From NCBI RefSeq assembly GCF_963853765.1, contig NC_088861.1:12276001-12340000 (forward strand): a stretch of DNA of 64,000 nt. Direction: 5' to 3'. Both the position numbers and the translations under genes were made by a program. This stretch comes from Magallana gigas (lineage: Eukaryota). The first letter of the stretch is position 1. Every line of letters begins with the position of its first letter. Below are positions 10,379-57,155 of the stretch, in pieces. Below the pieces are notes generated by a model. That model made no database searches, was not told the origin of the DNA, and was given only the letters and a program-made list of their open reading frames with translations.

Positions 10379-13300
10379 CTTAATGTCGTGCAAGTTTTGT
10401 ATGCACTAGCATCTGGCAAATTTTTAATTGTGAAATAAATTTTGTAAAATATTTATCTTTTTTGTTGATATTTACAGTCAAATTGTTAAATGTCTTGTCT
10501 TGTTAATTGTTGTCAATTTCCCTCTCGTCTAGAGCGTTGAAAAAAGAAGACGAATTTTCACAGCTTGGTTTCATAGCTTTAATAACAAACGAAAACCAAG
10601 TTTTTGTGTTTATACCAACACATTTTAATATACAAATAAAATATATATCTGGATTATGCCAATTTGTGGTCAGCTTTGCTAAATATAAATTTCACAATAG
10701 CAAGGTAACTGGATGGAAAGACCAAAATTTACTTTTGGAATATCTGAAAGGGAAAAAACGTGTTATTGTCGAGAAACAAATGTAACGCAGGTTTTTGTTG
10801 TTTTTTGTTTTGTTTTGTTTTTTGGGGGGGGGGGGTTGCGACATTAGCTTAAGTATACATGTACTGTTAAAAGGATTTTTGTAATAACAGAACAATACAC
10901 GTTTTCCAAATCCATCACATAAATTTTATATAAATTCTATAAGTTCTGAGTGTACAGTTGTTGCATGTACGTAAATGAATTATATGAAATACAAACAAAT
11001 TCAACAACCATCCTTAGTGTATTTGTTTTTGGGTCAGACAAATCTTGGATTCTTTAAAACTCAGAAGAAACTACAGCATGGAATCAACAGACTAACACTA
11101 ATAAAGTTGATTTAAAGACTTAAAGATTTAAAGGTAAAACGAAACCAAAAACTTTTGACAAACTTGTCAGAAAATGAACATAAATTCAATGCATCAAATA
11201 ATTGTGGGGGAGGGGGTAAATTAGGACTAAAACCTTGTTTATATATTGATTTTTCGGAACGTTTTAATTGTGGATGGAAAAATGACAATAACAAACCGTC
11301 AACCATCTCAAAAATCCATAAAACGAAAACAAATTCAAAGCAGTGCAACACGGACATCCAAAAAGATAGAGGTAGGATCAGGTGTTTAGGAGGAGTAAGT
11401 ATCCTGCTTACTGTTCATACCCGTCGTGTGCTCTTTGTCGTACTGGGGGGGGGGGAGGAAAAGTCCGTAGACAATTAGGTACATGTAATTAATTATGATT
11501 TAACAATTAGTATGAAAAACGTCGGTCAGCATGCGACCCAGTGGAAGATTGTATTTGCTGACAAAAAGGTGACTTCAAACGGGACTTTTGATTGTCCTGT
11601 TTTATCAACTTGTTTGTCAGTAGCTTGCCTCGCCTTAGATATTGTTCATACGAAGAGCATGGCCTTGTGTATCGAATTGATTGAGAGACAAAAACACCAT
11701 ATGTAGGTATATAGGTATATTGCTACATAAGTAAGGAAAGTTGACTATATAAAAATTGAAGACATTGCGTTTATCCTAAAGTTTTGTTGTTAGATTACCA
11801 TCCATTTGCAGTAAAATATCCAAAAATGAAACAGATGACGCAGACTCTGTGGATACACACATAACCCATTACATTTGTTAATAAAGGTGTATTATCAGCA
11901 GTGTGTGTTAACTGTTGATGACTAATCGATGCTAAACACAAAAAATATTGAAAACAATGTTTACGTGGCATTTTTTAAATTTTGAAACATGAAGGACATT
12001 AGCGTAGAATGCCCCACTTTCTCCCGGCAGATATAAAAATAGCCTGTATGAACATACATTTAAATTTCCTGTTCTGTCCAAACATCGGAGGAAACCCCCT
12101 TAGGCAAGTTCTCGGTATTGTAAGCTGCAAAGTATTCTACGAATTTAAGAGGGTTCTCATGTTAACATTTATTGATGAATGACATTTTTAAGGTAACAAA
12201 ACAAAACTATGTGACCTCCTTCAATCTTTACATTTAATTTACATTAATTTAAATATGTATATGTATCATCAGATGAAGAGACAGTGTATTATTGCAATAC
12301 ATTTTCCCTGCGCTGACAAGTAGAAATCAAATTATCTTATAGTAAAATTGAAAAACAGTGCATAACACAATCTAAAGTGATCGCCTTGATAAATGCATAG
12401 GTTTACTTTGCATTTAAACAGGAGACACCTATAAATAAATAAATGTAGACAAGATCCTCCACGTAGTTGTGTCTAGATATAGATGCGTTATGCCCCCCCC
12501 CCCTCCCCCTCTCAGATAAGGAAATAAACCTTCATTTCTGAAAAACCTTCTCTGGTTCAACACTCTAAACTTGTTTATATAAAGAAAGGTCCTTAACTAT
12601 TTATTGTTTTTTATGGAAACAGTACAAACCCAAAATGTCAATTTATCTAAATTACAAAATCATTATAACCATATTATAAATGTATAAAAAATTGTTTAAT
12701 ATATAAAGATAAGGCAATGCAACTTAGTAAAATATGGTATTATTCACACTTAAAAAGGTGTACTTTAAGCTCAAATATAAGATTCAACCTATCGATTTCT
12801 TGACAATGTCAAAATTGCAACAATCTTTAAATTCAAATATTCTATCTCTCTTGTATACAATATTTGCTTGATAAAGAATAAGAGACAGTATACGCAAACT
12901 GTCTTTTAACCAGACCTCTAAATTGCGTATATTTTATAAAATATATATGGTTATTATACAAATTAATATAATTCTTCCAAATGAATTTAAATCTATTATT
13001 TTTTTGGAGGGATATTTTAAAAGACGAACCTTACAAATTGTTAATTAGAGGTTAAAAAAATGTAAAATGTATGCAAAATAAATGAATAATGTTCAGGGCA
13101 GAGAAGCAAGTAAGTGATCTTGTAAAGTGCTAATTGGAAGCACCATTCAGTATTCAGCTATATTAAGGTTTTCAGTCTAATCGAAAATGTAATGGTTTAA
13201 TGTATATCTTTTTAAATTTCTTATCATTTTCATTTCAAATAATCATGCTGTTGTTTGTGTTCGTACTCTGCCGGATATGGCATAATTAAAAAGAAGGATT

Positions 13301-13473
13301 CAATAAGACTTTAGATAAAGGACCAATGACATATTTAAAAGACTCAGGGGCAACGTAATTGACTCAAAAGAGGATTTGCGTCATAAGATCCGTATTTCTT
13401 TAAATGAATCAGCTTTTTTTACAATATTATTAACAATATGTACGAAAAAGAAAGATCGATACTGGGCCAAAAC

Positions 13474-13512
13474 GGGAGATTTTGAACGTCCTACAAAAGT
13501 GGTATATATAAG
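13474..13512 (+). promoter_or_regulatory. Core promoter of gene 3: GGGAGATTTT motif plus TATATAAG
   Basis: GGGAGATTTT at 13474 and TATA at 13505. Spacing is 31 bp, versus 32 bp in gene 2. Confidence 0.55.
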
Positions 13513-13564
13513 CCGAGGAGTTGCATGCATAAAACTATATTAACCTTTCCACAGAATACGAAAA

Positions 13565-15623
13565 ATGTTCAATATGATTTTTATATGTTTGGGAGTTTTT
13601 TGCATAATGATTTCAGTGAACTGTGAAAAGAAAATAGGTATGTTTTCTATTATTTTTAAACCAAAAACATAAACTTCAGAAATTTAGCCGGCATAAATTA
13701 TTGGAAAATATTATAGTTGTAGATAGTGAGTGTGTCTACACGAAGATCGATGAAATTCTGGGTGAAAAATTTAATACAACGACACAGATTTGCTGCAAGG
13801 GGTCAGGAGTTCACGATAAATATCAACTGGGACAGGAAGTAGAATGCTGTGGAGGTAAGAAATTTTAATTAAAATCAACATTTATTCACATAAGTGCAGA
13901 AGATGATTTTCTTTATAACGACATGCCATCTTTTTTTTTAATCATTTATCCAAACGAGCAATGACCATTGAAACAATAATTAATTCTATATATTATATAC
14001 TCAGGAACAACTATTTATTAAATGCAGAGGTTGTATTTCATTGCAATTTAATAAACGTTCAAGTTTTATGGAGAAAGAATTGATTTTACTATAACAATAT
14101 TTTTACTGTGTTTTTAAACCTTTATAAAAAAAATTAAATGTAATCTATTTTAAATCGACAACTAACACACATAAAGTGCAACAAAACTGGTAACTAAAGG
14201 TTTTTAATTACAGATTGATATTTGTTACATGTTATCAAAATGAAGAGAAATAGCTATGCATATAGATTTAGGAGTTCTCTGAACTTATTTTTTTACGTGT
14301 TCAACATTATCTAACAGGACTGTTTTAAAATCGTCCCTTTTTCTATCTCAGAAAGAATTTACAGAAAGGAGAAAGAGATGTGTTGCAACGGACAAGTCCA
14401 TTCAAAGGATAACAATGTGAAAAACTGTAAACAGAGTTAGTATTCATTTGTTTCGTTTGGACGTTATTTTTAGGTTTAACAATAATCAGTTGCAGTATAG
14501 TGAACTGGTTGAGTTTTATCATTTTTGTGTCAAGTATGAACAGGAAAATGTAACGCCTCCAGAAAAATTGATAAAGCGCAATTCCTAAAAAACCTTTAAT
14601 CTTCCTTCTATAGTTAAGAAAGGTTCTCACGAAATTTATCGTGGAGGCGATATATTAAGTATTTTTCCATGGTTTAATATCATCAGATGTATATCGTGAT
14701 GGCTTCAATAATATTGTCCCTCCTACTAGTAAATTACTAAATATGTAATATATCCCTGAAATATTTTTAATGGACCCCCGAATGGATTTAAATTGTTTTA
14801 AATCCACATATCACTGCCATTGTTTGGAAACACTTATCTCAATTGAAAGTTGGTTTCTTTAAAAAAAAAAATACATTTTTGTAGCTTTTACCTATAGTTT
14901 ACTATAAACAACGCATCAGTTGCATTATTGTACCTATAAAAAAAAACCCGTTGATACAGGTTTTTACGGCAAATAATAGTAGACTAAATTAAAAATATAA
15001 TCAATCATTTTATTGATTACTAGTATTTCTATCTATGATATCAAGCATTTCAGTATATTCTACTTTTGTTAACACAATTTTTTAGTGGGTTGTCAGCTAC
15101 TTATATGCGTATGTTTCATATAAATTCCTAATTAATTTAACTTAAGATCAAAGGTTTATTTTAAAATACATTTTCTTCCTTTTTAAGAATGCATTTACTG
15201 CTTCACAGTTTAAATAACGCTATCAAATGTCAGTTGAAAATTATCTCTGGAAAGGAATAGTGGCGATTTTTAAATGACTAGGCTTGGATTGTTTTCATTA
15301 ATTAAAACCTATGTTTTTCAAGAAAAAAAAGTATATGACTTTTTACAGGAACACAGATCTTGGACAGTTGGAAAGTCACTAAAACAAGGTAAATACCTTA
15401 TCAAAGTAAGCAAGAGAATATTCAACTAATATTTATCCAATAATCATTATTGGTTCGTTTTCCCTTGCTTTTATAAAGTTTTAAACGTTTTTGTTTCATT
15501 CCTTTTAGATACAATAGGAGACATTTTATGGAAGTCAATGGATTTGTTGGGCGGGTTTTGAAATTGTGGTTAAGAAAATTAAAACAAAGAAGGCCATTGG
15601 TGATAGTGTTCAAAGCAAAATAA
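13565..15623 (+). CDS. Secreted galaxin-like CC-repeat protein, gene 3 (149 aa), with cationic tail
   Basis: Exons 13565-13637, 13717-13854, 14352-14435, 15349-15388, 15509-15623(TAA), all GT-AG, 450 nt in frame. MFNMIFICLGVFCIMISVNCEKKI-VVDSECVYTKIDEILGEKFNTTTQICCKGSGVHDKYQLGQEVECCG-ERIYRKEKEMCCNGQVHSKDNNVKNCKQ-RTQILDSWKVTKT-RYNRRHFMEVNGFVGRVLKLWLRKLKQRRPLVIVFKAK*. Confidence 0.85.
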
Positions 15624-22471: not shown

Positions 22472-22645
22472 CATCAAAGCATAGTTTTTGCTCCTTTGTA
22501 TCACTCTAGTAAAATTGGCACCATGACAATATTTTTCATAAGATGATGAGATGGGTCGTATGCACCTCTATCACAGCACTGAAGTCGTCATGGAAGGAAA
22601 AAATCATTTTTCCGTCAGCACAGTTTGCATGGACTATCGTAACTT
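22472..22645 (-). pseudogene. Decayed copy of exon 5 of the galaxin-NTR gene
   Basis: The reverse complement gacgacttcagtgctgtgatagaggtgcatacgacccatctcatca...tgtcatggtgccaatttt aligns to exon 38917-39084 (gacgacttcattgctgtggtaaaggtacatacgacccgtctcacca...tgttatggtaccaatttc). It contains stops and indels. Confidence 0.75.
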
Positions 22646-29130: not shown

Positions 29131-30745
29131 TCATAATAGTCCACGTAAGATTTTATGAATGCTTTGGACAATGTAACTACTACAGCTTTTGAATTACCTT
29201 TTTACTATTTGCATGATTTTTCTTCCTGATTAAAGAAAAGAGGTCGCTGTCTCCAAGACGAACAATATTCTGTAAAGAATGGAAAACGATATTTCGTTAG
29301 AAGTAAGAATTACTTTCTTTTTGATTTGTCAATATTAGTACAATTACTGGGTATCAGAAAAGTGTGTTGTTCTTTTTTACTTGGAACATTAGAGGAGTTA
29401 TAGATGTTTGCTTTCACTGTTACATCCAAATATGAAATTTAAAGTTGCACACTTAAAGTAGTCCGAGTATCGCACTACGTCATAATACGGATTTTACAAT
29501 ATTGGTTCGACTTTTACAAAGCGTTTTAGATACCCGGTATTGATTTTGCTCTACATCGCTGTTGTAAACAATGGCAATAATAAGCAATTAGAACGGTAAT
29601 ATATGTATTCTATGAGAGATAGAAATGATTAATGTTGAGAAACTCGATTCTGTTAAAGTAAAATGAAAAACGAAGTTGCTGATTAACCAGGATCTCAGGT
29701 ATGCTTATATCTTCTTTGTTTTGACCCCCCCCCCCTCCCGAATTTTTCTTTTCCTTTTACTAAAACCGGTTTAAATTTAGAGACAGAAGCTATTTCAAAT
29801 TTAATCAATTGTCAACTAATTAATGTTTAAATGATATCTGACATTGTTGACAGATCTAGGCAGAAAACTGTAGCAAAATGTGATTTTTACGGATTTTTTC
29901 GTCAGGGTCTACTTGGTTTAGAGCTTATAGCGTGAAAAGTAATCCGTCAACATATGATTTATTTTACCAAATCTTTTTTCTAAGATGTCAATCTATAGAA
30001 TAAACACCATGAATTTAAGTTTGAGTCCATAAAATAGTAAAAAAATTACCAAACGCGATACTAGCGTTGCATTTTTTGTATTCCTTTTTGATACATCAGG
30101 TCCATAAAGCGTACTTACTTACAAAAACTTGCGCAAAATTATTGATGAGATATGGCTTAAATAAATATTTATACTCTATTTTGTATGTTCAGTTCTAATT
30201 TTCCCAAAATTGGTAATCATTTTTAGGAAAAACGAACGTCTGCCAAATTTCATAATTGTCAATAATTTTCGCAAGGGGGTACACCCGTCTGAGAGGTGAT
30301 AACAAACAAACTAGCATGTAAACATACATATTTTCTTTTGTATATGTATTGCTAGAATGTATATTTATCATTTAAAGCTAAGCTTTTAATGATTGAGCCC
30401 ATTTAGTGCCGAGTATAGGACTACCTTAAGTTGGATACTTTCATAGGATTTTCGATTTTTAATATTAAACCTGAAAATAAATGATTAAAAATAGATTATA
30501 TTAACTTAATAACATATGTAAAAAGAACAATGTGAAAGCCTAGTATAAACTTACATTATCACGTTATAAAGCACTATACGGGTACACTCATGTAATACGT
30601 ACCTGACTGTGAAAATGCTTTTTTTTTTTAGATATTTTGATAAGATGTCACTAATAGAGATGTAAACTGGCGTTATCTGTATAAAAAGAAAAATGACGAT
30701 TGGTAAGCTATATTTTACCTCTTACTCCACACACGTCTTATTGCT
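29131..30745 (-). pseudogene. 3' remnant of a galaxin-NTR gene (last exon plus a scrap of the penultimate exon)
   Basis: 29131-29452 plus 30430-30470 align to last exon 36997-37355. There is a TCA>TAA stop, a +1 frameshift (acgaaatatcg versus acggatatcg) and an interrupting 969-bp element. The acceptor site is retained at 30471-30472. Confidence 0.88.
29457..30425. mobile_element. Non-autonomous DNA transposon with TTAA TSD (Kolobok-like termini)
   Basis: TTAA at 29453-29456 and 30426-30429. Termini AGTAGTCC...GGACTACC with longer imperfect TIRs. The paralogous exons have a single cttaag at this site. RR...YY ends plus a TTAA TSD is the Kolobok signature. Confidence 0.8.
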
Positions 30746-35588: not shown

Positions 35589-37720
35589 ACTTAGTCTTTG
35601 ATCATCACACAATGTGCTTGTGGTTCAACTTTCATTTTAGCTGTAGAATGAACAATTTCTGGTTTTCAATAATTTGACACAATGAAGATTAATCTTTGAA
35701 ATTTTTCAGCGCCCACACAGTTTCTTAACATACAAGGTGTGGGTCGAGGATATGAGATTTATGAAGTTTGGAAAGTCCCAAGCCTTCATCACAAACTTGG
35801 TCTGGTTGCTGGTTCCCAACGCGATATTTGTCAGGGCCAAGGAAGTCTAACTGTAGCTCGGGCCTTATATCAGTTAAAACTCATATAAAAATGACTTGGT
35901 TTTTGTTCTTTCTATATCGATTTTTTTTCAAACTGCGCTAAATATTCCATAGAATAAATAAGACGAAATTCTAAGTTAAAGCACAACTTTTATATGAAAA
36001 TGCGTGTTAAATCTTGTGATTTTCTTTTCAGTACATCTTTCTTCCTTCAGCTTCTAGAACATGCATACCCCCACATCGGTCCATCAACTCACTCTAGAGG
36101 AAGTCTTGTATTAGAAACTTCTATTAATTGTAATTTCTATACTAACAGTACATGTATTAACTATATGATGAAATGCAACAACACATATGAAGTTAAAGTT
36201 AACTTTGTTGTTTATTTCGAAAGACATTAGGTTACAGAATGGAGGCATTGTATAGCTTTGAATAAAATTCAATCAACACATTCATACAACATTTTAATAT
36301 ATATGTTAACACATTTCGAGAAATTTTTATGCAATCAAGAATGCACATATACGCTCTTTCAAAGACTATTGCCATATCTTGCATACGAACACATTATCTG
36401 TGAGACATAACAGATAATTGATGATTCAGAACATGATATAAAAATTCATTAGCAGTGTAACAAATGACAGTTCAATGTCAGTGAGCTAGATTATGATCAC
36501 TTGGTTCTCTACGTGCAATTTACAACAAAACATCTTCAAGTTTTTTTTTCTTCAAAATTCACTCTTTTTCACCAAACTGTTCTTTGCAATTTTATAAGGC
36601 TCGGTTTATGAATATCTTATCCAGCAATGAACACGTAGCAAGAACACTTTGGTCAAATGAATTTTGGGGATTCATCACTTTATCATTACATCTATGATCT
36701 GTCTGGCACACGTTTATTTTCCATTGCGGATCCAATCTTTCCGGGATTCAACTGTTTCAATTTGGTTGAAAACATTCACAGATTAACAGAATGGTTTTAT
36801 TTTAGTATTTTTCATGAAATATTACTCTGCTTTTTCTTGTATTTCGGCCTGTACTTAAAAAGTGTAGTTTCTTTTCTTGACAACAGTTAATATACAAGTT
36901 CATACATTTTGTTTTGTAAATACCTTTCGTTGGTACGGATATCGATGTTGGCGCGATGGGCCGAATGTTAGTGCAAACTGTACATCGTAATCATAATCAT
37001 CCACGTAAAATCTTATGGATGTTTCGAATAATGTAACTACTACAGCTTTTGGATCGTCTTTTTACTATTTGCACTATATTTCTTCTTGGTGGGAAAATGA
37101 GGTCGCTATCTCCAAGATGAACAATATTTTGTGAAGAATGGAAAACGATATCCGTTAAGAGCAAGAATGACTTCTTTTTTAATTTGTCCATATTAGTACA
37201 GTTACTGGGTATCAGCAAAATGTGTTGTTCTGTTTTACTTGGAACATTAGTGGAGTTATAGATGTTTGCTTTCACTGTTACATCCAAATATGAAATATGA
37301 ATTTGCGGACTTAAGTTGTACACTTTTATCGGGTTTACGATTTTTAATATGTAACCTGAAAATGAATGAGTCAAAATAGATTATATTTACCTGATAATAT
37401 ATGATAAAATATAAGCCTAGTATAAACTAATTTTTTCAAGTTAAAAACGTAATACAAGTAATACGTAACTGACTGTGAAAAGGCTAAATTTTTTTATATT
37501 TTTGTAGGATGTCGCCAAAAGACAAACAAAAAATTGTTTGTAAATTGGCTTAATCTGTATGACTTTGTAAAAGGAAAATAACGATTGATAAACAATATTT
37601 TACCATTTTTTCTACACACGTCGGCTGTGCTGCTTATGAACCCTATTCTCTGTGTCTTGGGCTGTGACCATATCGAACATAAACCAGAGGGCGATGGACT
37701 GTTGCAACTATAAGAAGAAT
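34430..37720. repeat. Segmental duplication, copy B (matches ~25940-30745 and ~50050-52990), with an internal ~480-bp local duplication (34540-34920 and 35020-35400)
   Basis: Collinear anchors: aatgactttccca.cagag, ttctagaacatgcata, cacttggttctctac and the last-exon region. Confidence 0.88.
35706..35864 (-). pseudogene. Dead copy of importin-alpha exon (copy B)
   Basis: cagcgcccacacag...cacaaacttggtctggttgctggttccc..gcgatatttgtcagggcc matches 63220-63380. Splice donor lost. Confidence 0.88.
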
Positions 37721-40700
37721 TTAGTGTTTATCTTTTGTACGTGGAAACAATGGATTAAACTGGACATATAGATCACATTTGGTTATGATGTTATGAAACA
37801 CATGGAGAAAACAAAGTAGAAGAAAAATCATGATTTGAAATATATAATAACGTTTCTAAGTTAAAACTTACAATATTTGATCATGATATGTACTTTTAAA
37901 AATCCTTTTCAAAAAGTAAGCTATGACTTGCTGAGTTTGACAAAAGAACTTAGACAAAGTCGTTAATATTTTCAGTCTCATTGAATGGTCTTTAATGAAC
38001 ATAAAACCATATTTTACAACTGTTTTGATTTTTACAATTGTACTTTAGAGCCATTAAAATCTAACAATGTTTAGTTCATGATGTATTAGCATTCATAAAT
38101 TTGGTCGTGAGTCTTTGTAAAACGCAGTCCTGTACCTTTCTCTGACAATTTGACCTGTTGTACCAAGCAGAAGTGACGTACTTATAAGATTAAAGGTAAT
38201 TCAAATACTTGTTCCTGAAAAAGATCTTTCATTATAAAGGTATCCCTTAGTCCAATAACATTTTCAGGCAAAACTAAAGCGATAAAATTTCTAGATAGGA
38301 ATAGTGACGATACAATGGGCAATTAATAAGATGGGTGTAAAATGTCTACCTTTCTGCTTTTCCTTTTACTTCACCATGACAACAAATCTGGTTTCTAGGA
38401 TCGTAGGCAAGCGTCCCTGGATTACAGCATCGTTTTCCCATTTTATGTGCCCCTCTATGAATTTCATTGTTGCAGCAGAGGTCTGATTTCTTGTCGTAGC
38501 TTTGCCTCCCACAAAAATCGGATTTTTTCTTTTCCTGCTTTTTACAAGAAAAAAAGGAGGTCGCATTTTTATTGCAACAACTAGTGTGATCGGGTAAAGT
38601 CTTTTCAATAGTGGATCCATTTTCGCAGCAAAGCTGCGTCGTTGAGTAGTACACATTGTTTCCACAACAATGTAATTTTGAATTATAATTTGTTGTGTAT
38701 ACAGTACCTAAGATGAAACAAAAATGTAGACAGAATGTACATTCTTTTTTTAAAAATTAAAACACAACGTGAATTTTTGACAAATTAAAATTGATTCGAA
38801 GAATTTGTTTATAATTTTGCCCTTTTTTGTTTAAACTAATTTGACTACTATTGAAATTTGCTACTTCCATTGAACATTACAAGAAACTGAGCTCCTAGTA
38901 TAAAAATAATATATACCATCACAACAGATTTGCTGCCCCTGTTGCATTGCTGTGGAGAAATTGGTACCATAACAACACTCTTGGTGAGACGGGTCGTATG
39001 TACCTTTACCACAGCAATGAAGTCGTCCATCGGAGGGGAACACTTGTGTCTTGCAGCACAGTTCTTGTGAGGAATCGTACAATCCTATTTGTAATTAAAC
39101 AAACTTTAGCTTTGGAAATTTATGTAAAATCATACTTAATATCATTAAAATTATCCAGCTATTCATTTCATAAAATGATAACAATTTTAAGATCGAACTG
39201 TAAATATGTTGTACTTACCTGTTCCACAACATTGACCATTTTTGGGCTGAATTTTCTTTTCACCAGATCCCCTACAGCACTGTTTAGTCCTTTTATCATA
39301 CACTTCCGATCCACAGCATCGGAAGTGCCGGTCGTACGATGAAATATTCCACAAAGTGGAGTCTTCACAACATTTTTGTGTCTGTCTGTTAAACAGAGTT
39401 CCATTACAGTAGTCATGTCCTAATGGAACAACCTTGTCCCTAACGCATCGTGAATGGGTCCTATTGAATGGTGTTGTTTGGTTGCAGCAACCATCATTCT
39501 TTGTATAGTTGTTCCCACAGCATGACATGCCTAAAGAGTAATTTTTTCAAGGTAAGACTGCTATATAGAATTGATGCATAGATAAATAGATATTTTACTT
39601 TTCAGTCGAATTAAAAAGTTATCTAGGCTTCCATCATTTGAAGGGGGTGCATAAATGGAACTATCAACCGGGTGTGTGTGAAGGGTTGTCCTGTAAATAT
39701 GGATGAGACCTTAAACGACTAACCAAGGTTAATTGCCATGGCCGATTGAGTTCATTCAAATTTTTAAAAAAATGCTTACACTTGCAGTAAGCATTTACTC
39801 GTATCCGGCAATGGACCTTACTAGTATTTGAACCCAGAAAGCATGGCAAGAAAAAAAAGAAGTTTTATTATTATTCTATTCTGTTTTTCCTTATAATATA
39901 CGCCATTGATGTAGTGGGATAGTTATTATAAAATTTAAAGGAAGAAAACAAACACCATTGCTTGTGATAAAAGGAGCTGATTTCATATACTAATATATGA
40001 TATCACTGTCCAGAAATATTTTAATTTGCTCTACAAAATTAAAGGGAACTATACACGATTTCAGATTGAAAAAATATTTTTAATTTTGTAAATAAAATGG
40101 TTTATTTGTGTATTTTGAATGATTCACCAAAAGTTGAATGTAAGAAATTAAGTTTCAGGCGAGATAGGGAGCAAAAAAGGCGTTGTTATATGTAAACAAA
40201 GTCTTATATTTGATTACTACAAGTAACTTTGTAAACTAAAGAAATACCATTTCATTGACAAAATATATTGTGGCAAACAAGATGAGCTGATTCATTGCAT
40301 TTACAAATACTTTCATCAACAACAAAATACAACATTAGATTGACACTTCTACCGATACAACATATAAGTTAACAATATCAGGTCTCGAGTTTTATTTACA
40401 AAACAAAGAACTCTAACCTTTGTTACTCGCTTGTAACTCGATATTTGACTTTCAAATGTTAACAAAGCTTTAAAAACATCCATTTTGACTATTCTTGACA
40501 TTGAAAATGCAAAATCTAAATTTTTTGCTGAAAATCGTGTCCACGTCCCTCTAGAATGATAAACAGGAAATACGCTCTGATAAGAAGAAAATAAATGACT
40601 CGAGTAAGGACTATCGACGGGGCAGAGATTGTGGGACGGTTCTTATTTATCTCTACTTTGCGTGATAATGTTTATATCTTTTTAAAAAAGTCTTACTAAA

Positions 40701-42088
40701 ACAATGTATTTAAAGGCATATATGCCGTTTTTAACGCTGTTTCTGATATGTTAGAAACCCGACCAAATCTTTGTCCACATAAAAGAAAANNNNNNNNNNN
40801 NNNNNNNNNNNNNNNNNNNNNNNNNNNNNNNNNNNNNNNNNNNNNNNNNNNNNNNNNNNNNNNNNNNNNNNNNNNNNNNNNNNNNNNNNNNNNNNNNNNN
40901 NNNNNNNNNNNNNNNNNCATATTTATAAACGCGATTCACGTAAGTGCAAACTTCCGCATGAATGTAATGAAATGTAATCGAGAAGGACAGCGTGGAGGAG
41001 AGGAATGACTGCAAGATTGTTTACAAAATTAAATGTTGAAATACTTTTTTGACGTTGAAAAAAATATATTCCTTCAAGACCTTAGCTTCGAAACACTATT
41101 AACTATTATCTAAAGACCACCATTTTTATTTATACCAGATCAGAAAATAAATAAAACATAACGTCAGTATTACCCTCGACTCAAGACAAGAGGGTCTGTT
41201 TTTCTTTATATTGTCTACGAATGCGTTAGCCTGTTACTAGAATATCGACATCGCTTTCGCGACGATTTCTTGTTTACATACTAAACAGGTTTGTGACATA
41301 TTTAAATAGGGGCGTTTACTAACCGGAGCTGGCAGTTAATAAATTGATTAGAAATATACAATACTTTTAAACGCGTTTGGACTACATTGTATAAACTGCA
41401 AAAAATCTCTGACTTATGTAGATCACCAAAGTTACCTTAACTACTTTAACAACTTACTTGACATGTACATTTTACTTTTTGAGGTCGACATTTCCAAGCA
41501 AAAATGCACTGTCAAAATAAAGACACATAACACTACCCCCACACACACAAGCACAGACAAACANNNNNNNNNNNNNNNNNNNNNNNNNNNNNNNNNNNNN
41601 NNNNNNNNNNNNNNNNNNNNNNNNNNNNNNNNNNNNNNNNNNNNNNNNNNNNNNNNNNNNNNNNNNNNNNNNNNNNNNNNNNNNNNNNNNNNNNNNNNNN
41701 NNNNNNNNAACAAACACAAACTTACCAACAATTTGATCCACCTGAAAAATGTTCGTCCCACAACATATTTGTTCTTTTCCTTGGTTTTTTCCGCTTTGAA
41801 CATATCTTTCATGTAAAGAATTCGACTGGCAACAAATCTTATCCAAAGTTCTGTATGTTACACCTACAAAATATGTTGCAAAAATATATCGTGTACTTAG
41901 ACTTCCAATGTCGATTAGCTTCTAAGGTATATTTAAATAAACCCGCAGATCTTTTCTAACAATAAAATGTATCGTGTTACACCTACAAATGAAAGTTTTA
42001 TCATCTTGAAAGACTACAGATTTTTATGGAATATTAAACAACATAACTGGAGTATTATTTAACCCTATCAAATATGTCTAATTTACTT

Positions 42089-42146
<58 letters not shown>

Positions 42147-42206
42147 ATGGAATATTAAACAACACAACTGGTGTTTTTTAACCCCAACAAATGTGTCTTA
42201 TTTACT

Positions 42207-42252
<46 letters not shown>

Positions 42253-42687
42253 TCCACAACAGTCTAGTTCCTCGTCGCTGTCTTTGATACGATTAAACAA
42301 GGTGTTGTTGCAGCAAACTTTGGTCTCACGATTGTAAGATTCAAGGTGTGGAACACCTCTTGAAAACGTAAGGCAACTTTCGGCACTTACTGTAAAAAAA
42401 AAGAAACACCTGTACATATGATTTGTGAATTTAATACCAAACAGTATTATTTGATAAAACAATTGTGGGGCAATTTATACGTCTAACGAATTGCAAAACG
42501 GTCTCATCAGTATATATTTTTAAAATTAAAAAAGTTTCTTTAATTTGTATAATTTTTTTTCGTGCACGTGAAAATTAATTTTCAGTATTGTATCTATTTT
42601 GGAAATGTTGACATAACACATACCTGTAGTATTGCATCGAAGTAAACAAACAACAAACCAAATACAGATTTGGTAAGGTACGTCCAT
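36997..42687 (-). CDS. Secreted galaxin-like CC-repeat protein with probable C-terminal NTR/C345C domain (copy B, 546 aa, intact)
   Basis: Exons 42624-42687, 42252-42389, 41726-41863, 39219-39530, 38917-39084, 38350-38707, 37604-37707, 36997-37355(TGA), all GT-AG, 1641 nt in frame. Signal peptide MDVPYQICIWFVVCLLRCNTTVSA, then many galaxin-type CC repeats (e.g. YDKRTKQCCRG, YDPSHQECCYG, YDPRNQICCHG), then CSIW...DVCRKNGYILKI...LLIPSNCTN...KKSFLLL...VKRRSKSCS. Two N-gaps lie in intron 3, so an additional phase-1 exon could be hidden. Confidence 0.85.
40043..40550. mobile_element. Degenerate Kolobok-like non-autonomous element in intron 3
   Basis: Left end TTAA|AGGGAACTATACACGATTTCAG. Right end GCTGAAAATCGTGTCCACGTCCCT (reverse complement AGGGACGTGGACACGATTTTCAGC). 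The right TSD is degenerate (ctag). Confidence 0.65.
40790..40917. other. Assembly gap (N run)
   Basis: 128 consecutive N. Confidence 0.99.
41564..41708. other. Assembly gap (N run), flanked by CA-rich sequence
   Basis: 145 consecutive N. Confidence 0.99.
41933..41982 (-). pseudogene. Partial decayed duplicate of the 5' end of exon 3, with intact acceptor
   Basis: ttgtag|gtgtaaca... repeats the exon-3 acceptor. It reads GVTRYILLLEKICGFI* versus GVTYRTLDKICCQ. Confidence 0.55.
42020..42250. repeat. Two (CT)n tracts within a ~120-bp tandem duplication in intron 2; (GA)n starts at the splice donor
   Basis: atggaatattaaacaaca.aactgg occurs twice, each followed by (CT)n. The minus-strand donor reads GTGAGAGAGAG. 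Confidence 0.9.
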
Positions 42688-42770
42688 CTCAATCTCGTTA
42701 ATTAAATTTAATGAATAAACATAATAATGTCTGCTGTTTTTAAAAAAAGTAAAACTCTAAAAATAGAAAC

Positions 42771-50295: not shown

Positions 50296-53200
50296 TTAGT
50301 TACAACTCATTTGAAATAAAGGAGCTGGTTTTTTTCTCTCTAGAAGAAATCTAAATTGATTGTGTTTTTCAACCTGCGCTAAATATTCCACAGAATTAGA
50401 ATGACGAAATTCTAAGTTAAGAGAAATTTTTAATCTTAATGGAGATTTTCATTTTAGAATGTCTTTCTTCCTACAGCATCTGGAACATGCATATCCCCGT
50501 ATCGGTCTATCAATTCTCTCAAGAGGAAGTCTTAAATTATATTAAAAACTTCTAATAATTGTAATTTTTGTAGTACTGTAACAATACGTGTATAAACTAC
50601 TTAGAAAAGAACGAAAGAGAACAACACATACGAATTAATGTTGTTTATTTCGAAAGACAGTATGTTACAAAATGGGGTTATTTTATAGTTCCTTAAATAA
50701 AACTCAATCAACACATTCATACATATTTTTGATATACATGTATGTTAATATATAAGACGGCATATTTAAGAATTCAACAGTACAAACATACACTCTTCCA
50801 AATGCTCTTGTCATTTTGCATAAGAGGCCAATATGAGACATAAAAGATATTAGATGAACATGAAATGAATACATTAACAATGTAACAATTGGCTATTGAA
50901 CACATACACTCTTTCAAATAACATTGCCATTTTTGCATAAGAACACAACATGTGATTTTCTTTTCTGTCCACCTTTCTTCCCACAGCTTCTAGAACATGC
51001 ACACCCCAATTAAGTCTCATAATAGATATTTCTATTTACTGTCATCTCTGTAGTAACAGTACTTATTAACAACAATATGACGAAGGAAAACAACACATGT
51101 AAAGTTAAAATTAATTTTGTTGTTTATATCGAAAAAATTACGTTACAAAATGCTTCATATTTCCTTTGATTATACTCAAGAAAATAAAAATCATTTATAT
51201 TTTTTGCTAAAATAGGTTTACATATAAATATGAGTTATTCTTATAAAAACTCTGGCCATTTTCTAAAATAAAAAATGAACACGTTGAGGCATAACAAACA
51301 ATTGTGAACATGATTTTAAAAATACATTAATAAATTAAATGCACCAAATGACTTTTCATTGTCATTTCATTAGAAAAAGGTCACTGGGTTCTCTATATCC
51401 AGTTTACAAAAAAAAACATCTACAAGACAATTCTATTTCTCAATTCACTCCTTCCTCTCGCCAAACTGTTCTTTGCAATTAAATTAAGCTCACAAAACAT
51501 TCTTACAATATAATACATATAAGTACATATTCATTACCTGCATGCAGTTAGTTATCATTCAAAAACCCTGATCATATATATTTAAATCAATTCCTAATAC
51601 ACCAAACCATATGACTTCGTGTTTCAACGACACACTTTGGGAAATGGTTTGGTATGCAGAGGGCACCGCAATCGTTGTTAAGCACTCCAAACACTCAGAA
51701 AAAAACAATAGTATAAGCGTTAAATCACACGATTTGGCTTGATTCATGTTTCAGCGACACGAACTTCGTGTGGTTTTGCGTCCAAAGTGCTGAATCTTTA
51801 ATTTTATGAATTTATTATCTATGGCTTAAAAGATGCAATACACGGTTAAAATTTGTGTAAGTATAAACAGTGTATCATACGATATCCGGCAAACAGCACA
51901 TTGCACGACCATTTTGGTGAAATGAACTCTGGGGATTCATTATATCATACCATGATATCTTTGAACAGGAACAGTCTGTCAAATGTTTATTTTCCATCGC
52001 AGATCCAATCTAACATTCGAAAGTATAATTTCAACTTTTACTTTGCTTTTCCTTGCATTTTATCAAAATTTAGGTGTTTTCGTCCTGTGCTTTAAAACAG
52101 AATGTTATTTATTTTCTAAGGATTGATAAACAAGTTCGTACAACTTGTAAAAATATCGGATGTTAGCATGACGGGGGTCATTGCTTTGTGCTAACTGTAC
52201 ATCCTACTCATAACTGTCCACTTAGAATCTTATGGATGTTTCGAACAATGTAACTACTACAGCTTTTGAATCGCCTTTTTACTATTTGCTCTGTCTTTCT
52301 TCCTGATGGAAAAATAAGGTCACTGTCTCCAAGATGAACAATGTTTTGTGAAGAATGGAAAACGATATCTGTTAAGAGCAAGAATGTTTTTTTTCGGAAT
52401 TTGTCCATATTAGTACAGTTACTGGGTATCAGCAAAGTGTGTTGTTCTGTTTTATTTGGTCTATAGGTGGAGTTATAGATGTTTGTTTTCACTGTTACAT
52501 CCAACAATGATATTTGAAGTTGCGAACTTAAGTTGGATACTTTTGTCAGGTTTTCAATTTTTAATCTATAACCTAAAAGCATTAAATTAAAAAAAAGATT
52601 ATAATCTCATAATATAGGATACAACATAAGCGTACGATAAACGTATAATATTATATCACATTTTTAAGCGTTATACCAGTAATAACCGACAGTGAAAATA
52701 TTAAGTTCTTTTATTTTTATCGGATTTAGCTATAATAGTTAAACAACTTGTTAATAAATGTACGTTTGTAAATTGGCTTAACCTGTAAAAAATTAAGGGA
52801 AAAAAAGAAGAAATAACGATTGATAATTTATATTTTACCATTTGTTCTACACACGTCTGCTGTGTTGTTTATGAATCTTTTTCTCTGTGGCGCTGACTGT
52901 GAACATAACGAACATATACCAGAGGTCTGTCTATCCATTCTAATAGGTGCTGGAAGGGACGTTGGACTGCTGCAACTATAAGATGAAGAGAATGTTATGG
53001 TATACATTGAAATATCAGTGTATATGAAAGAACATAATACTCAACATATTACCAAATATAATCATCGTTTTAAACTCAATCATCACAATAGTAAGTTGAC
53101 CATCAATTGTATTGTATAATGAAACAACTAATTTAAAAGAATAAAACATATGATCAAAAGAATTTTTTAAATAAGCAAGAAATAGAAATGGGATCTGTTG

Positions 53201-55433
53201 ATTCTTTAATATCTTTTAAAGTTTTAACACAAGTATTTGTTCAACCAATTCGGTTTAATGCTCTTTAAAATACAGGATAAACAGATTCAGACAATAAGAT
53301 ATAGACCGATATCATCTTAAAGCAAATCTTCAGTAGCTATGTTTTTTGAAGAACCTGAGATACCAGTACATACTAATTCATACCTTTCTGTTTTTCTCTT
53401 CACTTCACCATAACAACATGTCTGGTTTCTAGGATCGTAGGCAAGCGTCCCTGGATTACAGCATCGTTTTCCGGTTTTCATTGCTCCTCTATGGATTTCA
53501 TTGTTGCAGCAGAGGTCGGATTGTTTGTCGAAGCTTGCCCTCCCGCAATCAGAATCGGCCTTTTCCCATTCCTGCTTCTCACAAGAATAATAAGTAGCAT
53601 TTCTTTTGCAACAACTGGTGTGATTAGGTGAAGTCTTTTCTATCTTGATGCCATTTTGGAACAGAGGTGCGTTGTGGAATAGTACACATTGTTACCACAA
53701 CAACGTAAATGTAACTTATAGTCTATAGTGTATATGGTACCTGCAATGAAACATTGAAAATTAATGTAAAACATAATTCGGATTTCAAGAAAACACCATA
53801 GGATTTTTAAAAGTTAAATGTTACTTTTATTCAACATTAAGAGAAAATGGGTTAGGCGAGCCTTGTGCATACCTTTACAACAGATTTGCAGTCCCTTTTT
53901 CATCGCCCTCCCACCACAGCAGTCTTGGTGGGCTGGATCATATGTACCTTTACCACAACATTGACGCCGTCCAAAAGACGGGAACACTTGATTCTTGCAG
54001 CACAGTTCTTGTGAGGAATTGTACAATCCTATATGTAATTAAACCAACTTTAGCTTTGCTTTGGAACTTTATGAAAATTATTCTTTTTATCATTAACATT
54101 ATCCAGGTACATGTATATTCATGTTATAAAATGATAACACTTCAGATTTTAAAATAAGCTGTAAGAAATGTTGTACTTACCTGTTCCACAACATTGACCA
54201 GTCTTGGGCTGAATTTTCTTTTCACCAGATCCCCTACAACACTGTTTAGTCCTTTTATCATACATTTCCGATCCACAGCATCGAAAGCGTCGGTCGTTCG
54301 ATGAAATATTCCACAGAGTACTAGTGGAATCTTCACAACATGTTTGTTTCTGTCTGTTAAACAGAGTTCCATTACAGTAGCCGTGTCCTAATGGAACAAC
54401 CTTGTCCCTAACGCATCGTGAATGGGTCCTATTGAATGGCGTTGTTTGGTTGCAGCAACCATCACTCTTTGTGTAGTTGTTCCCACAGCATGACATGCCT
54501 AAACATAATTTTGTTTTTCAAGGTTAGACTGTAATGTGGTAGTGTCGCATATATTGAATAAATATTTTACATTCAAATATATTTACAATCACCAAATCTG
54601 GTGCGTATGAATACAATCTTCTTTCTGTATTTCTCGAAGAACATGACTGACTCTCCTTGCAACTTCAAACCGGATCACGGCCTGGTTTTATACTTACTCT
54701 GATATAAACATTTCATTGATGTAAAATTATTTTCAACAGTTTATTAATTCATTATTTTACCAAAGGTTTCATTCATCGAATAACAGAATAAAAATAAAAT
54801 TGTGTACGTAGAATTTATTGCATTGTGCACTATTATTGTTAGCATAACTCGGATGTTCAAATGGCTCTTCCGTTAATTGTGCATTAATGTTTTAAGATAA
54901 ATCATAATTGCGGAAAGGGAATAAATGTTTCTAAAAATATATATCACATAGCGTATGTGATACTTGTTTTGAAAATCAAAAAAAAAATTAAACACATAAA
55001 CAAATTGTTGTTTGTGAAGGAAGGGCAGTGGCTGGAGTTATTTAAATAATACTTTGGCTCAGCAATTTTGAAATAAAAGAAAGTATGATAAACAGGAAAT
55101 ACGCTCTGATAAAAAAAAATACCGGAGTAAGGACTATCGAAGGGGAACAGACATTTTTTTTTAAATGTTGCAATAGATTTGATTTATCTTTAGTTTGCGT
55201 GATATTTGTTTATATCTTTCAAAACAAGTACATACTCTTACACATTTAAAAAAAAAAAAAGAAAAAAAAAAAAGGAAAATCGCATTCGTTGGGACAAAAA
55301 GAGAACTCTCTTTTGTGTTTCAAATAAATTTAGCTTTTGATCCTTTCTAAAAGGATCTGCGTTTAAAGTATGTTAACAGTAACCTTAACAACCTGGAAAA
55401 ACTTTCATGCATATTGTATTTTGATTCCATTAA

Positions 55434-55824
55434 AGCTGAACACCGCTAGTAAATAGGCACCGTCACACAGATACCTGGTATATAAACCCTTCGATTTCGT
55501 TACACCCGATTGCACACCTGAACCTCGTGGCCGACATGTAGTATTCCTTTCGTGGTCTTTAGATTTTATGCATTTTTTTCTTATCTTATGACCAATTTAT
55601 TTGATGTTAGTATTCTCCTGGCTTCAAAAAGGTGCGTAAAACTTGATAGTTTCATCGCGACCGAGTAACACGGCGAGACAAAATGTACGTCCACACAGGT
55701 GAGACCTCTACAGCGAAGTACTTTGAACTGTTTAGAGGTCTGTCCCTTATATAAGGGTTGCAGGGACAGCAGTGAGTAAAGAGAAATATGGCGGACAGTG
55801 CCTATTTACGAGCGGTGTTCAGCT
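55434..55824. mobile_element. 391-bp MITE with ~31-bp TIRs and TTAA TSD (Kolobok-like)
   Basis: Left AGCTGAACACCGCTAGTAAATAGGCACCGTC, right GACAGTGCCTATTTACGAGCGGTGTTCAGCT. TTAA at 55430-55433 and 55825-55828. Confidence 0.92.
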
Positions 55825-55906
55825 TTAATGCCGATTTATAGAACGTTATTTTTGAGATCGGAAATTCCAAATAAAATGCATTGTAAAAATAAAGACACAT
55901 AATGTT

Positions 55907-55956
<50 letters not shown>

Positions 55957-56175
55957 AACTTACCAAAGGCCACTTGAAAAATGTTTGTTCCACAACATAT
56001 TTGTTCTTTTTTTTGGTCTTCCCCACTTTGAACATGTCTCTCACGTAAAGAATTAGGCCCGCAACAGATCTTATCTAAGACGTTGTATATAACATCTACA
56101 AAATATTTTGCAAAATTATATAACGTGTGATTAGAATGTAGATAACGATTATTATATTCAGGTATATTTAAATAC

Positions 56176-56252
<77 letters not shown>
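55907..56252. repeat. Two (CT)n tracts in introns 2 and 3 of copy D
   Basis: ~55907-55953 and ~56178-56252. The latter begins at the donor (GTAAGAGAGAG on the minus strand). Confidence 0.95.
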
Positions 56253-56255
<3 letters not shown>

Positions 56256-57155
56256 CTCCGCAACACCCAACTTCTTCTTTACTGTCCTTATTCCGATCAT
56301 ACAAGGTTCCATTGCAACAAACCTTTGTATCACCATTGTAATATATTCCAGAAGATGTGAGGCATCGGTCAGCATTTACTTTGAAAGGAGAAATAAAACT
56401 ATTCGTTTCAAGTACGTGATTTGACTCGGGGAAAACCCATAAAACAACCCCTGAGAAATCAAAATGACCACGATCATTTGAAAATTTTAAATAATCAAAA
56501 ATTCACAACGCTTTAGTAAAGGACATTGGTAAGCTTGAATGTCAGTTTTCGAGAGGTCAAAAGATCTTTTTTTTTATTGCAAGTAATTGGAGCTTTGGCA
56601 TATCTATTTATTTAAAACTGTCGAGTTCAAACGTTGGTTGGACTTTAAATCGAGCAGAACTTGAATCAAAATTAAAATGAATTGATATAACTTTTGACAT
56701 ATTAAATGTAAGCATTGATCGAATTGTATTTCGGTAACGGGTTGATTTGAATCAATATTTTTAAAAAAGAAAGATTTTTCAGTAATTTGATTAATGATAA
56801 AAAAAATAATTAAAAAACAATGAAAAGACGTTTTTATTTTATGGCCTTGTGCTGTTAAAAACTTCAATCTGGCTGTTTTACAAAGAATTAAAAAATCATT
56901 AAATTGCTAAAACTTAGACCTTTTTTTTAAAATAAAGTTTCAAATATTTTTTTTATCGAATTGGGCAAATAATATTTCAAAAGAAAAAATATTAGACAAA
57001 CCCGTATTGCCTCCAAATATGACAAGGAAAACAATGCAAATATGAAATGCGACTTCCATCGGTATTTTGTTGTCTGTATTCTTATGCTATCAACTACAAA
57101 GTACTTGCATAATTGTTTTTCAAAACCTATTTATACATACCCAGATCGAGATCAA

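What the first reader, a model, noticed from the sequence alone, without database searches (positions are those of the whole stretch)
36997..42687. Secreted galaxin-repeat protein fused to a probable NTR/C345C domain
Seen: signal peptide, about 380 aa of CC repeats with many N-glycosylation sequons, a Ser/Pro linker, then a ~140-aa domain with Cys spacing CxxC/W-(~16)-C-...-C-...-C and the motifs C..NGY.LKI, K.FLLL and a terminal basic helix ending KSCS. Known: NTR modules (netrin C-terminus, sFRP, complement C3/C4/C5 C345C, PCOLCE, TIMP N-domain) have CxxC, then C followed by (D/G)Y-hydrophobic-K, a mid-domain Cys before a YLI-type strand, and a C-terminal Cys; they mediate protease inhibition and protein or heparan binding. 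Inference: a galaxin-NTR architecture that I do not recognise from described proteins, possibly a matrix-anchored metalloprotease modulator or complement-like adaptor.
Basis: partly seen in the sequence, partly recalled or inferred. Interest (0 to 1): 0.78.

Follow-up and report, generated by a model that had tools for sequence, protein, structure and literature searches.

The report
Oyster galaxin protein with NTR-like tail
This is a real, transcribed Pacific oyster gene for a secreted cysteine-rich galaxin-repeat protein whose last 145 residues fold like a netrin/complement/TIMP-type (NTR) module that sequence databases do not recognise, a new but lineage-restricted domain combination whose function is untested.

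Summary
An 8-exon minus-strand gene (42687..36997) encodes a 546-aa protein identical to RefSeq XP_034330949.2, an "uncharacterized protein" of Magallana gigas (LOC105330650). RNA contigs from three runs join exons 1-2 and 3 through 8. Both assembly gaps lie in intron 3 and are spliced out.

Residues 22-393 are galaxin repeats (Pfam PF24748; 20 CC pairs). The C-terminal ~145 aa have no Pfam or PDB sequence match. Structure and language-model evidence point to an NTR domain:
- Two AlphaFold models (this protein, and a 30%-identical relative) give a beta-barrel flanked by terminal helices.
- Their best structural matches are the C345C domains of C3/C4/C5 and the PCOLCE1 NTR domain (Foldseek E 3e-4; Z 8.1 and 7.4). 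Agrin NtA, meteorin and TIMPs follow, and generic OB folds rank lower.
- Protein-language-model neighbours are all NTR families.
- The relatives share the pattern C-x2-C…C…C-x-C…C. This gene keeps only four of those six cysteines.
- The domain is very basic (pI 10).

The fusion occurs in at least four oyster paralogues, in Magallana and Saccostrea. I found no paper describing it.

The likeliest role is a basic binding or anchoring module, not a TIMP-type inhibitor. That is inference.

Another first-stage note on this same stretch already calls it a "galaxin-NTR array". The scan has not reported it on other DNA.

The parts
42624..42687 (-). Exon 1: ATG and signal peptide (MDVPYQICIWFVVCLLRCNTT), phase-1 donor
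   Evidence: The e1-e2 joint 42389/42624 is seen in RNA contigs. Identical to XP_034330949.2.
42252..42389 (-). Exon 2: first galaxin CC repeats. The donor is directly followed by a (GA)n microsatellite on this strand.
   Evidence: (PF24748 at E 0.003).
41726..41863 (-). Exon 3: galaxin CC repeats
   Evidence: The joint to exon 4 (39530/41726) is seen in three runs.
39531..41725 (-). Intron 3, which holds both assembly gaps (40790-40917 and 41564-41708)
   Evidence: It is spliced out as one piece in RNA contigs of X1, X2 and X12, so the gaps do not touch coding sequence.
39219..39530 (-). Exon 4: galaxin repeats
   Evidence: PF24748 E 6.4e-10. Joints.
38917..39084 (-). Exon 5: galaxin repeats
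   Evidence: PF24748 E 9.8e-8. Joints.
38350..38707 (-). Exon 6: last galaxin repeats, phase-2 donor (…GKAE|S)
   Evidence: PF24748 E 4.9e-13. Joint 37707/38350 in three runs.
37604..37707 (-). Exon 7: Cys394, the Ser/Pro linker, and the N-terminal helical part of the NTR-like domain (C403, W406 in place of the second Cys, C424)
   Evidence: AF2 helices at model residues 4-9 and 13-22. Joints.
36997..37355 (-). Exon 8: beta-barrel and two basic C-terminal helices of the NTR-like domain (S478 in place of the fourth Cys, C480, C532), then the TGA stop
   Evidence: Ka/Ks against the tandem paralogue is 0.41.
36750..36996 (-). 3' UTR, at least this far
   Evidence: RNA contig depth continues to the end of the laid stretch (table 2).
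52211..57059 (-). Tandem paralogue with the same galaxin + NTR-like architecture. It is the orthologue of the C. angulata 'galaxin-like' protein P0004 and keeps CSLC.
   Evidence: tblastn gives 97-100% identity per exon. Exon 6 appears frameshifted in this assembly.
29140..29456 (-). Decayed copy of exon 8 with an in-frame stop and a frameshift

Best explanation
LOC105330650 of the Pacific oyster encodes a secreted, probably N-glycosylated protein in two parts. About 370 residues are galaxin-type di-cysteine repeats. They are followed by a short Ser/Pro linker and a ~145-residue, strongly basic domain.

That domain is a divergent netrin-like (NTR/C345C, TIMP-like OB-fold) module: an N-terminal helix, a five- or six-stranded beta-barrel and two C-terminal helices. 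Its sequence has drifted below the reach of Pfam.

The ancestral oyster form had the six NTR cysteines (C-x2-C…C…C-x-C…C). In this gene the second and fourth are replaced by W406 and S478. That leaves the C424-C532 pair and two orphan cysteines (C403, C480) that could form a hybrid bridge.

I infer that the domain works like the C-terminal NTR modules of PCOLCE, netrins and sFRPs. It would be a cationic docking module that binds sulfated glycans or a matrix or partner protein, and so fixes the galaxin repeats at an extracellular surface (shell or organic matrix, mucus or epithelium). I do not think it is a TIMP-type protease inhibitor.

Shown: gene structure, transcription, galaxin repeats, conservation of the fusion, predicted fold and its best matches, basic charge.
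Inferred: homology to NTR, disulfide pairing, the binding function and its location.
For: Gene and transcript.

Galaxin repeats: and for relatives.

Fusion conserved in four M. gigas / M. angulata paralogues and two Saccostrea echinata proteins.

Fold, model 1 (this protein, pLDDT 75.7, pTM 0.73):
- The 21 best Foldseek PDB hits are all C345C domains (E 2.8e-4 to 3e-3); 1xwe and 1uap are also listed.
- In the Foldseek-independent scan, ranks 1-8 are C3/C4/C5 C345C, PCOLCE1 NTR and agrin NtA, with Z 8.1-6.4 and 106-126 residues aligned. The C345C and PCOLCE1 matches span model residues 1-2 to 135-144.
- Generic OB folds score Z<=6.4 and most cover only about residues 27-125.

Fold, model 2 (30%-identical relative P0014): the top Foldseek hit is PCOLCE1 NTR, E 4.3e-4 and 19% identity. 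Z is 7.4-6.1 for the same class.

ESM Atlas shape: netrin-1, NTR and complement clusters at TM 0.51-0.58.

Language-model features: the ten best named clusters are all NTR/TIMP clan, scores 0.94 and 0.93.

Cysteine pattern and spacing.

Charge: pI 10.0 and net +14, conserved in relatives at pI 9.7-10.2. This matches the published definition of the netrin domain: basic, a cysteine pattern, and a beta-barrel with terminal helices (PMC3516229).

Constraint: Ka/Ks 0.41 on exon 8.

Function by analogy: the PCPE-1 NTR domain does not inhibit MMP-2, BMP-1 or ADAMTS enzymes but mediates heparin/heparan sulfate effects (PMC2871463).
Against: No sequence-level link was found.
- Pfam PF01759 gives no hit at E<=10 on this protein or on any relative.
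- A family profile and single sequences find no NTR, TIMP or complement chain among PDB sequences.

The models rest on a shallow 16-sequence alignment and have pLDDT of only 70-76. Z of 7-8 is what the tool says unrelated models often reach, and other OB folds (CST, HIN, Teb1) follow closely. Three bacterial Atlas clusters (two named 'hypothetical protein', one DUF2066) score higher TM than the NTR rows.

This gene has lost two canonical cysteines, and exon 7 shows Ka/Ks above 1 over 34 codons. The module may therefore be relaxing.

No binding, localisation or tissue data were obtained.
Confidence: 0.6

Rival explanations
1. The C-terminal domain acts as a metalloprotease modulator. It would be TIMP-like after proteolytic release at the Ser/Pro linker, or PCOLCE-like as an enhancer. 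The protein would then regulate MMPs or astacins in shell or matrix remodelling.
For: The fold class is shared with TIMPs and PCOLCE1 NTR. TIMP/NTR-type proteins recur in bivalve shell matrices (PMC10755359). The linker could be a cleavage site; this is inference only.
Against: TIMP inhibition needs Cys1 as the free N-terminus in a C-x-C motif. Here the first cysteine is internal, the motif is C-x2-C, and in this gene it is C-x2-W. Two of the three ancestral disulfides are broken. The PCPE-1 NTR domain, even when trimmed to start at its first Cys, inhibited none of the metzincins tested (PMC2871463).
Confidence: 0.12
2. The protein is mainly a cationic antimicrobial or microbe-binding factor of mucosal surfaces. 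Its basic amphipathic C-terminal helices and galaxin repeats would act on bacteria, as proposed for squid galaxins.
For: Net charge is +23 overall and +9 in the last 30 residues. Squid galaxins are cationic, are expressed in epithelia facing bacteria, and their repeat peptides inhibit bacterial growth (PMC12773714). Transcripts occur in an oyster metatranscriptome run. A first-stage note reports neighbouring galaxin paralogues with cationic tails (unchecked).
Against: The terminal helices are predicted to pack on the barrel as part of a folded domain, not as a free peptide. No expression or induction data were obtained here. Basic charge is itself a hallmark of NTR modules (PMC3516229). This reading is compatible with an NTR fold, so it competes only on function.
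Confidence: 0.18
3. The domain is not homologous to NTR. It would be an oyster-specific domain that AlphaFold renders as a generic OB-like barrel, or mis-models, and the cysteine and motif resemblance would be convergent.
For: There is no HMM-level similarity to NTR or TIMP. pLDDT is 70-76 from a shallow alignment. Z is 7-8, with generic OB folds at Z 5-6.4. The family has only about nine detectable members among 1.84 billion representatives.
Against: Two models of sequences 30% identical (built from reorderings of the same 16-sequence alignment), two aligners, and the ESM Atlas shape search plus a language-model feature search all put NTR-class proteins first among eukaryotic or solved matches. 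The C345C and PCOLCE1 matches cover the terminal helices as well as the barrel, which most generic OB matches do not. Cysteine number, order and spacing, and the P-C-x-C-P-x-L then LLL strand motif (CACPKL in P0007), fit NTR modules.
Confidence: 0.15

Closest known systems
C-terminal NTR modules of PCOLCE1, netrins and sFRPs, and the C345C domain of complement C3/C4/C5 (Pfam PF01759)
   Same: The module is C-terminal in a secreted multidomain protein. Its predicted beta-barrel has N- and C-terminal helices. Its best structural matches are 6xzu, 2a74, 5jpm, 6rqj, 1uap and 1xwe. The family consensus has six cysteines in the same order. It is strongly basic.
   Different: It gives no Pfam or PDB sequence match. 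The N-terminal partner is galaxin repeats rather than CUB, laminin-EGF, Frizzled-CRD or macroglobulin domains. This gene has only four of the six cysteines. The family was found only in oysters (Ostreidae).
Galaxins and galaxin-like proteins (Pfam PF24748): coral skeletal matrix galaxin, squid EsGal1-10, bivalve Cysrichin
   Same: It has a signal peptide followed by tandem di-cysteine repeats, with significant PF24748 matches. It is cationic. It sits in a tandem gene cluster with other galaxin-like genes.
   Different: The papers on galaxins that I found and read describe repeats only (PMC12773714, PMC2726143, PMC10045328). Here a folded ~145-aa non-repeat domain is appended.
TIMPs (PF00965) and agrin NtA (PF03146)
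   Same: They have the same OB-type fold class and appear among the structural and language-model neighbours.
   Different: In TIMPs the module is N-terminal, with a free Cys1 in a C-x-C motif that chelates the catalytic zinc. Here the domain is internal or C-terminal with C-x2-C/W. There is no second TIMP subdomain.

Membership tests
NTR / C345C module (PF01759, TIMP-like OB fold) | Beta-barrel (OB-type) flanked by N- and C-terminal alpha-helices | tested here: met
   AF2 models. The best PDB matches are C345C/NTR domains: Foldseek E 2.8e-4 and 4.3e-4, Z 8.1 and 7.4. The C345C and PCOLCE1 alignments include the terminal helices. These are predicted, not experimental, structures with pLDDT 70-76.
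NTR / C345C module (PF01759, TIMP-like OB fold) | Six conserved cysteines in the order C1-x(2-3)-C2 … C3 … C4-x(1-2)-C5 … C6 | tested here: inconclusive
   Relatives P0014 and P0007 have C-x2-C-x20/21-C-x54/61-C-x-C-x49-C. The window's protein keeps only C1, C3, C5 and C6 (C2 is W406, C4 is S478). Residue-level equivalence to NTR cysteines could not be checked, and disulfide pairing was not testable.
NTR / C345C module (PF01759, TIMP-like OB fold) | Enrichment of basic residues | tested here: met
   pI 10.0 and net +14 for residues 403-546. Relatives have pI 9.7-10.2. The criterion is as stated in PMC3516229.
NTR / C345C module (PF01759, TIMP-like OB fold) | Significant match to the family's sequence profile | tested here: not met
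   PF01759 gives no hit at E<=10 for this protein's exons or for eight relatives. A family profile and single sequences find no NTR chain in the PDB. Profile-profile comparison (HHsearch) could not be run. I therefore file the domain as NTR-like at fold or superfamily level, not as a Pfam PF01759 member.
TIMP (PF00965) | Module at the mature N-terminus, with a free Cys1 in C-x-C, followed by a C-terminal subdomain (12 Cys in total) | tested here: not met
   The domain starts at residue ~403 of 546, after the galaxin repeats. The motif is C-x2-W (C-x2-C in paralogues). No second subdomain is present.
Galaxin-like repeat proteins (PF24748) | Signal peptide plus tandem repeats carrying CC dipeptides, above the Pfam gathering score | tested here: met
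   Scores are 49.6, 39.5 and 32.4 bits on exons 6, 4 and 5, against a cut-off of 28. There are 20 CC dipeptides.

The most novel reading that the evidence does not exclude
Oysters evolved a private, Pfam-invisible subfamily of NTR modules by fusing one to galaxin repeats. Within it, the LOC105330650 lineage collapsed two ancestral disulfides (1-4 and 2-5) into a single hybrid C403-C480 bridge. The fusion would tether an antimicrobial or mineral-interacting galaxin array to sulfated matrix at the shell-mantle or mucosal interface. That would link two protein types so far known separately from bivalve shell matrices and mollusc epithelia.
Probability: 0.25. Interest if true: 0.55.

Novelty: new variant of a known kind. 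Interest (0 to 1): 0.42.

Why it matters
Galaxins are widely cited in coral and mollusc biomineralisation and, more recently, in squid-microbe symbiosis, yet their mode of action is unknown. A natural fusion to a recognisable docking module gives a handle: what the NTR-like domain binds should show where the oyster places these repeats.

It also shows that public annotation ("uncharacterized protein"; Pfam: galaxin repeats only) misses a whole folded domain that structure-based methods can name. It adds an architecture to the mobile NTR module, and I found no report of this architecture in the papers searched.

The effect is limited. The family is small, appears confined to oysters, and no phenotype or expression pattern is attached yet.

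Tried and rejected
Searches that gave nothing for the C-terminal domain:
- Pfam on each exon and on eight relatives found only Galaxin_repeat.
- phmmer and hmmsearch against PDB sequences, with exon 8, profile A3, and the domains of P0007 and P0014, returned only chance hits (ETV6, a siderophore-binding protein, polyhedrin, an antibody).

Searches for relatives:
- Word-index searches with exon 8 and with the domains of P0004 and P0014 found only oyster proteins and fragments.
- The exhaustive profile search of 1.84 billion representatives gave 12 hits. Three of them (P0008, P0009, P0013) are repetitive proteins that I rejected as spurious after reading them.

Gene model:
- I considered an alternative exon-6 donor (…CCHG|gtgaag, phase 1). 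It is out of frame with the exon-7 acceptor, and the RNA joint 37707/38350 contradicts it.
- I considered a hidden exon in the assembly gaps. The e3-e4 joint and the orthologue lengths exclude it.

Literature: gene and protein accessions appear in no searchable paper. Papers mentioning galaxin together with NTR, netrin, C345C or TIMP do so for separate proteins.

Taxon of the unnamed fragments: P0006 is not on record, and P0012 lies on an uninformative 1.5-kb JGI contig.

Not done:
- I did not type NTR sequences from memory to run hhalign, so no profile-profile test was made.
- No coordinates of the models were available, so Cys-Cys distances were not measured.
Full report
**Gene model and assembly gaps**

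Six-frame reading of 36900-42750 shows a minus-strand gene of eight exons with GT..AG introns.
- Exons: 42687-42624, 42389-42252, 41863-41726, 39530-39219, 39084-38917, 38707-38350, 37707-37604, and 37355-37000 plus a TGA stop.
- Intron phases are 1,1,1,1,1,2,1.
- The 546-aa product is letter-for-letter the RefSeq protein XP_034330949.2, "uncharacterized protein isoform X1 [Magallana gigas]" (P0017). The window is therefore Pacific oyster reference sequence, and the locus is LOC105330650.
- An older prediction of this locus (XP_011430803.1, 392 aa, "galaxin-like") has about the length of the repeat region alone.

The two N runs flagged by the scan program (40790-40917 and 41564-41708) both lie in intron 3. 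Contigs from three public runs, one a declared RNA-seq oyster metatranscriptome, join 39530 directly to 41726. A 93%-identical allele (P0016) aligns over all 546 residues without a gap, and P0024 and P0021 are also 546 aa. No coding sequence is hidden in the gaps, and I did not try to fill them.

**Transcription**

One search shows depth on the exons and almost none on the introns. It also shows exact joints for e1-e2, e3-e4, e4-e5, e5-e6, e6-e7 and e7-e8.
- One 309-nt RNA contig runs from exon 8 through exon 7 into exon 6.
- The e2-e3 joint was not reported, because the tool skipped the (CT)n microsatellites at 42084-42260. It rests on the RefSeq identity.
- The raw-read polyA run (X21) sampled about 1% of its reads and gave nothing useful.

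**The galaxin part**

Pfam Galaxin_repeat (PF24748) matches exons 6, 4 and 5 above the gathering score, and exon 2 weakly. The protein has 20 CC dipeptides, 53 cysteines, 13 N-x-S/T sequons and an N-terminal hydrophobic stretch typical of a signal peptide (and by inspection).

**The C-terminal domain: sequence searches**

Exons 7 and 8 (residues 394-546) have no Pfam match at E<=10 and no PDB sequence match.

A word search found only oyster ORF fragments. Two of these lie on genomic contigs with the same exon order as exons 5 to 8.

A profile search of 1.84 billion representative proteins found nine genuine relatives and three spurious repetitive proteins. The full-length relatives all combine galaxin repeats with this domain:
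- P0004: Crassostrea angulata "galaxin-like", the orthologue of the tandem paralogue at window 52211-57059.
- P0015: M. gigas.
- P0014: M. gigas LOC105335054, on a different scaffold (57.9 Mb against 50.4 Mb).
- P0007 and P0010: Saccostrea echinata.

Pfam sees only galaxin repeats in all of them.

Alignment A4 shows a family consensus of C-x2-C, 17-21 residues, C, 54-61 residues, C-x-C, 49-51 residues, C. Motifs include LPC-x-CP-x-L followed by an LLL(T/M)(D/N) strand, an invariant GD-x-D…P, and a basic terminal helix.

From memory, and not tested here, this order and spacing resembles the PCOLCE1 NTR domain (disulfides 318-386, 322-389 and 333-437).

The window's protein keeps C403, C424, C480 and C532. 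The second cysteine is W406, in all alleles and in the C. angulata orthologue. The fourth is S478, in the whole LOC105330650/P0004/P0015 clade.

**The C-terminal domain: fold**

AlphaFold2 on residues 398-546, using the 16-sequence alignment, gave pLDDT 75.7 and pTM 0.73. The predicted order is two N-terminal helices, six strands and two C-terminal helices.
- Foldseek against the PDB: the first 21 hits are all C345C domains of C5, C3, C4 and cobra venom factor (E 2.8e-4 to 3e-3, TM by query 0.41-0.50). The isolated C5 C345C (1xwe) and PCOLCE1 NTR (1uap) are also listed.
- A scan that does not rely on Foldseek ranked C3, C4 and C5 C345C (Z 8.1-7.8, 121-126 residues), then PCOLCE1 NTR (7.0), the isolated C5 C345C (1xwe, 6.7) and agrin NtA (6.4). 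Meteorin NTR (6.3), hookworm ES-2 (6.2), N-TIMP-3 (5.4) and TIMP-1 (5.0) follow, interleaved with generic OB folds (CST/Ctc1, Teb1, HIN, RPA) at Z<=6.4.
- The C345C and PCOLCE1 alignments run from about residue 1 to 135-144 and so include the flanking helices. Most generic OB alignments cover only about 27-125.

A second model, of the 30%-identical six-cysteine relative P0014 (pLDDT 70.2), reproduced this.
- Its best Foldseek hit is PCOLCE1 NTR (E 4.3e-4, 19% identity).
- Z is 7.4-6.1 for C3, PCOLCE1, C4, C5 and ES-2.

Other lines agree.
- ESM Atlas shape search gives netrin-1, "NTR domain-containing" and complement clusters at TM 0.51-0.58. Three bacterial clusters (one named DUF2066) score 0.59-0.63, which I cannot explain.
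- Language-model feature search of exon 8 alone, and of the P0014 domain, puts PF01759 clusters first (0.94 and 0.93). TIMP-3, meteorin, NtA and C17orf58 come behind.

I conclude, at about 80%, that the domain belongs to the NTR/TIMP-like OB-fold class. The weak points are the absence of any profile-level sequence signal, middling model confidence and a modest Z margin.

**Function**

The domain is very basic: pI 10.0 and net +14, with +9 in the last 30 residues. This is conserved across relatives. The netrin domain is defined by basic enrichment, a cysteine pattern and a barrel with terminal helices (PMC3516229).

TIMP-type inhibition needs a free N-terminal Cys in C-x-C, which is not the case here. 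The PCPE-1 NTR domain did not inhibit the MMP-2, BMP-1 or ADAMTS enzymes tested, and instead mediates heparin/heparan-sulfate effects (PMC2871463).

Exon 8 is under purifying selection against the tandem paralogue (Ka/Ks 0.41, against 0.23 for galaxin exon 4). The short exon 7 is not (1.45 over 34 codons, which is noisy).

My preferred mechanism is therefore a cationic docking module that anchors the galaxin repeats to sulfated matrix or to a partner protein.

Two rivals remain open. One is an antimicrobial or microbe-binding role, as proposed for cationic squid galaxins (PMC12773714). The other is a role in shell matrix, where TIMP/NTR-type proteins recur (PMC10755359). No tissue data were obtained, because run names were coded.

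**Novelty**

The protein is in public databases but unnamed, and its C-terminal domain is unannotated. I found no paper on these accessions and none describing a galaxin-NTR architecture. A survey of NTR-containing proteins (PMC3516229) does not contain the word galaxin.

NTR is a known mobile module, and the family here is small and, among named sequences, confined to Ostreidae. I rate this as a new variant of a known kind, of moderate interest.

Another first-stage note on this same stretch already uses the term "galaxin-NTR array". Neither look-up returned an instance on other DNA.

Noticed in passing
window 52211-57059 (-), especially ~53640-53700: The tandem paralogue matches the C. angulata protein P0004 at 97-100% per exon. 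In this assembly, however, exon 6 reads 'THLCSKMASR*' in one frame and continues '…QNGIKIEKT…' in another. That is an apparent 1-nt frameshift relative to P0004 and to contigs L001/L002. It may be a pseudogene in the reference animal or an assembly error.
   Followed up: partly
window 29140-29456 (-): A decayed copy of the NTR-like last exon, 76% identical over 58 aa. It has an in-frame stop after '…NIDKSKRK' and a frameshift before '…FKSCSSYIVQSIHKILRG'. No galaxin exons were detected next to it.
   Followed up: partly
window 42084-42140 and 42207-42251; also 55900-56250: Long (CT)n/(GA)n microsatellites start immediately at the donor site of exon 2 (…CCGG|gtgagagagag…). The same holds in the paralogue. 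They made the read-laying tool skip the e2-e3 joint.
   Followed up: no
window 38537-38917 and 39529-41738: Minor RNA-contig joints. 38537->38917 uses an internal acceptor in exon 6, would shift the frame, has depth 8.5 and occurs in one run. The variants of the e3-e4 joint carry an extra T or AAAGG, and are probably alleles or paralogue cross-mapping.
   Followed up: no
whole gene, alleles P0016, P0021, P0024: M. gigas database alleles of this 546-aa protein differ from the window's copy at 16 to 37 residues (93-97% identity) with no indels. This is high coding polymorphism even for an oyster.
   Followed up: partly
window 849-15623 and 22487-22641: Further galaxin-like genes lie upstream (first-stage note s1-395821). 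tblastn with the NTR-like domain finds nothing there, so those paralogues lack it. There are weak galaxin-repeat hits at 22.5 kb.
   Followed up: partly
ESM Atlas shape search: Three bacterial clusters (two named 'hypothetical protein', one DUF2066; Pseudomonadota, ~300 aa) match the model with TM 0.59-0.63. That is higher than the eukaryotic NTR rows and is unexplained.
   Followed up: no
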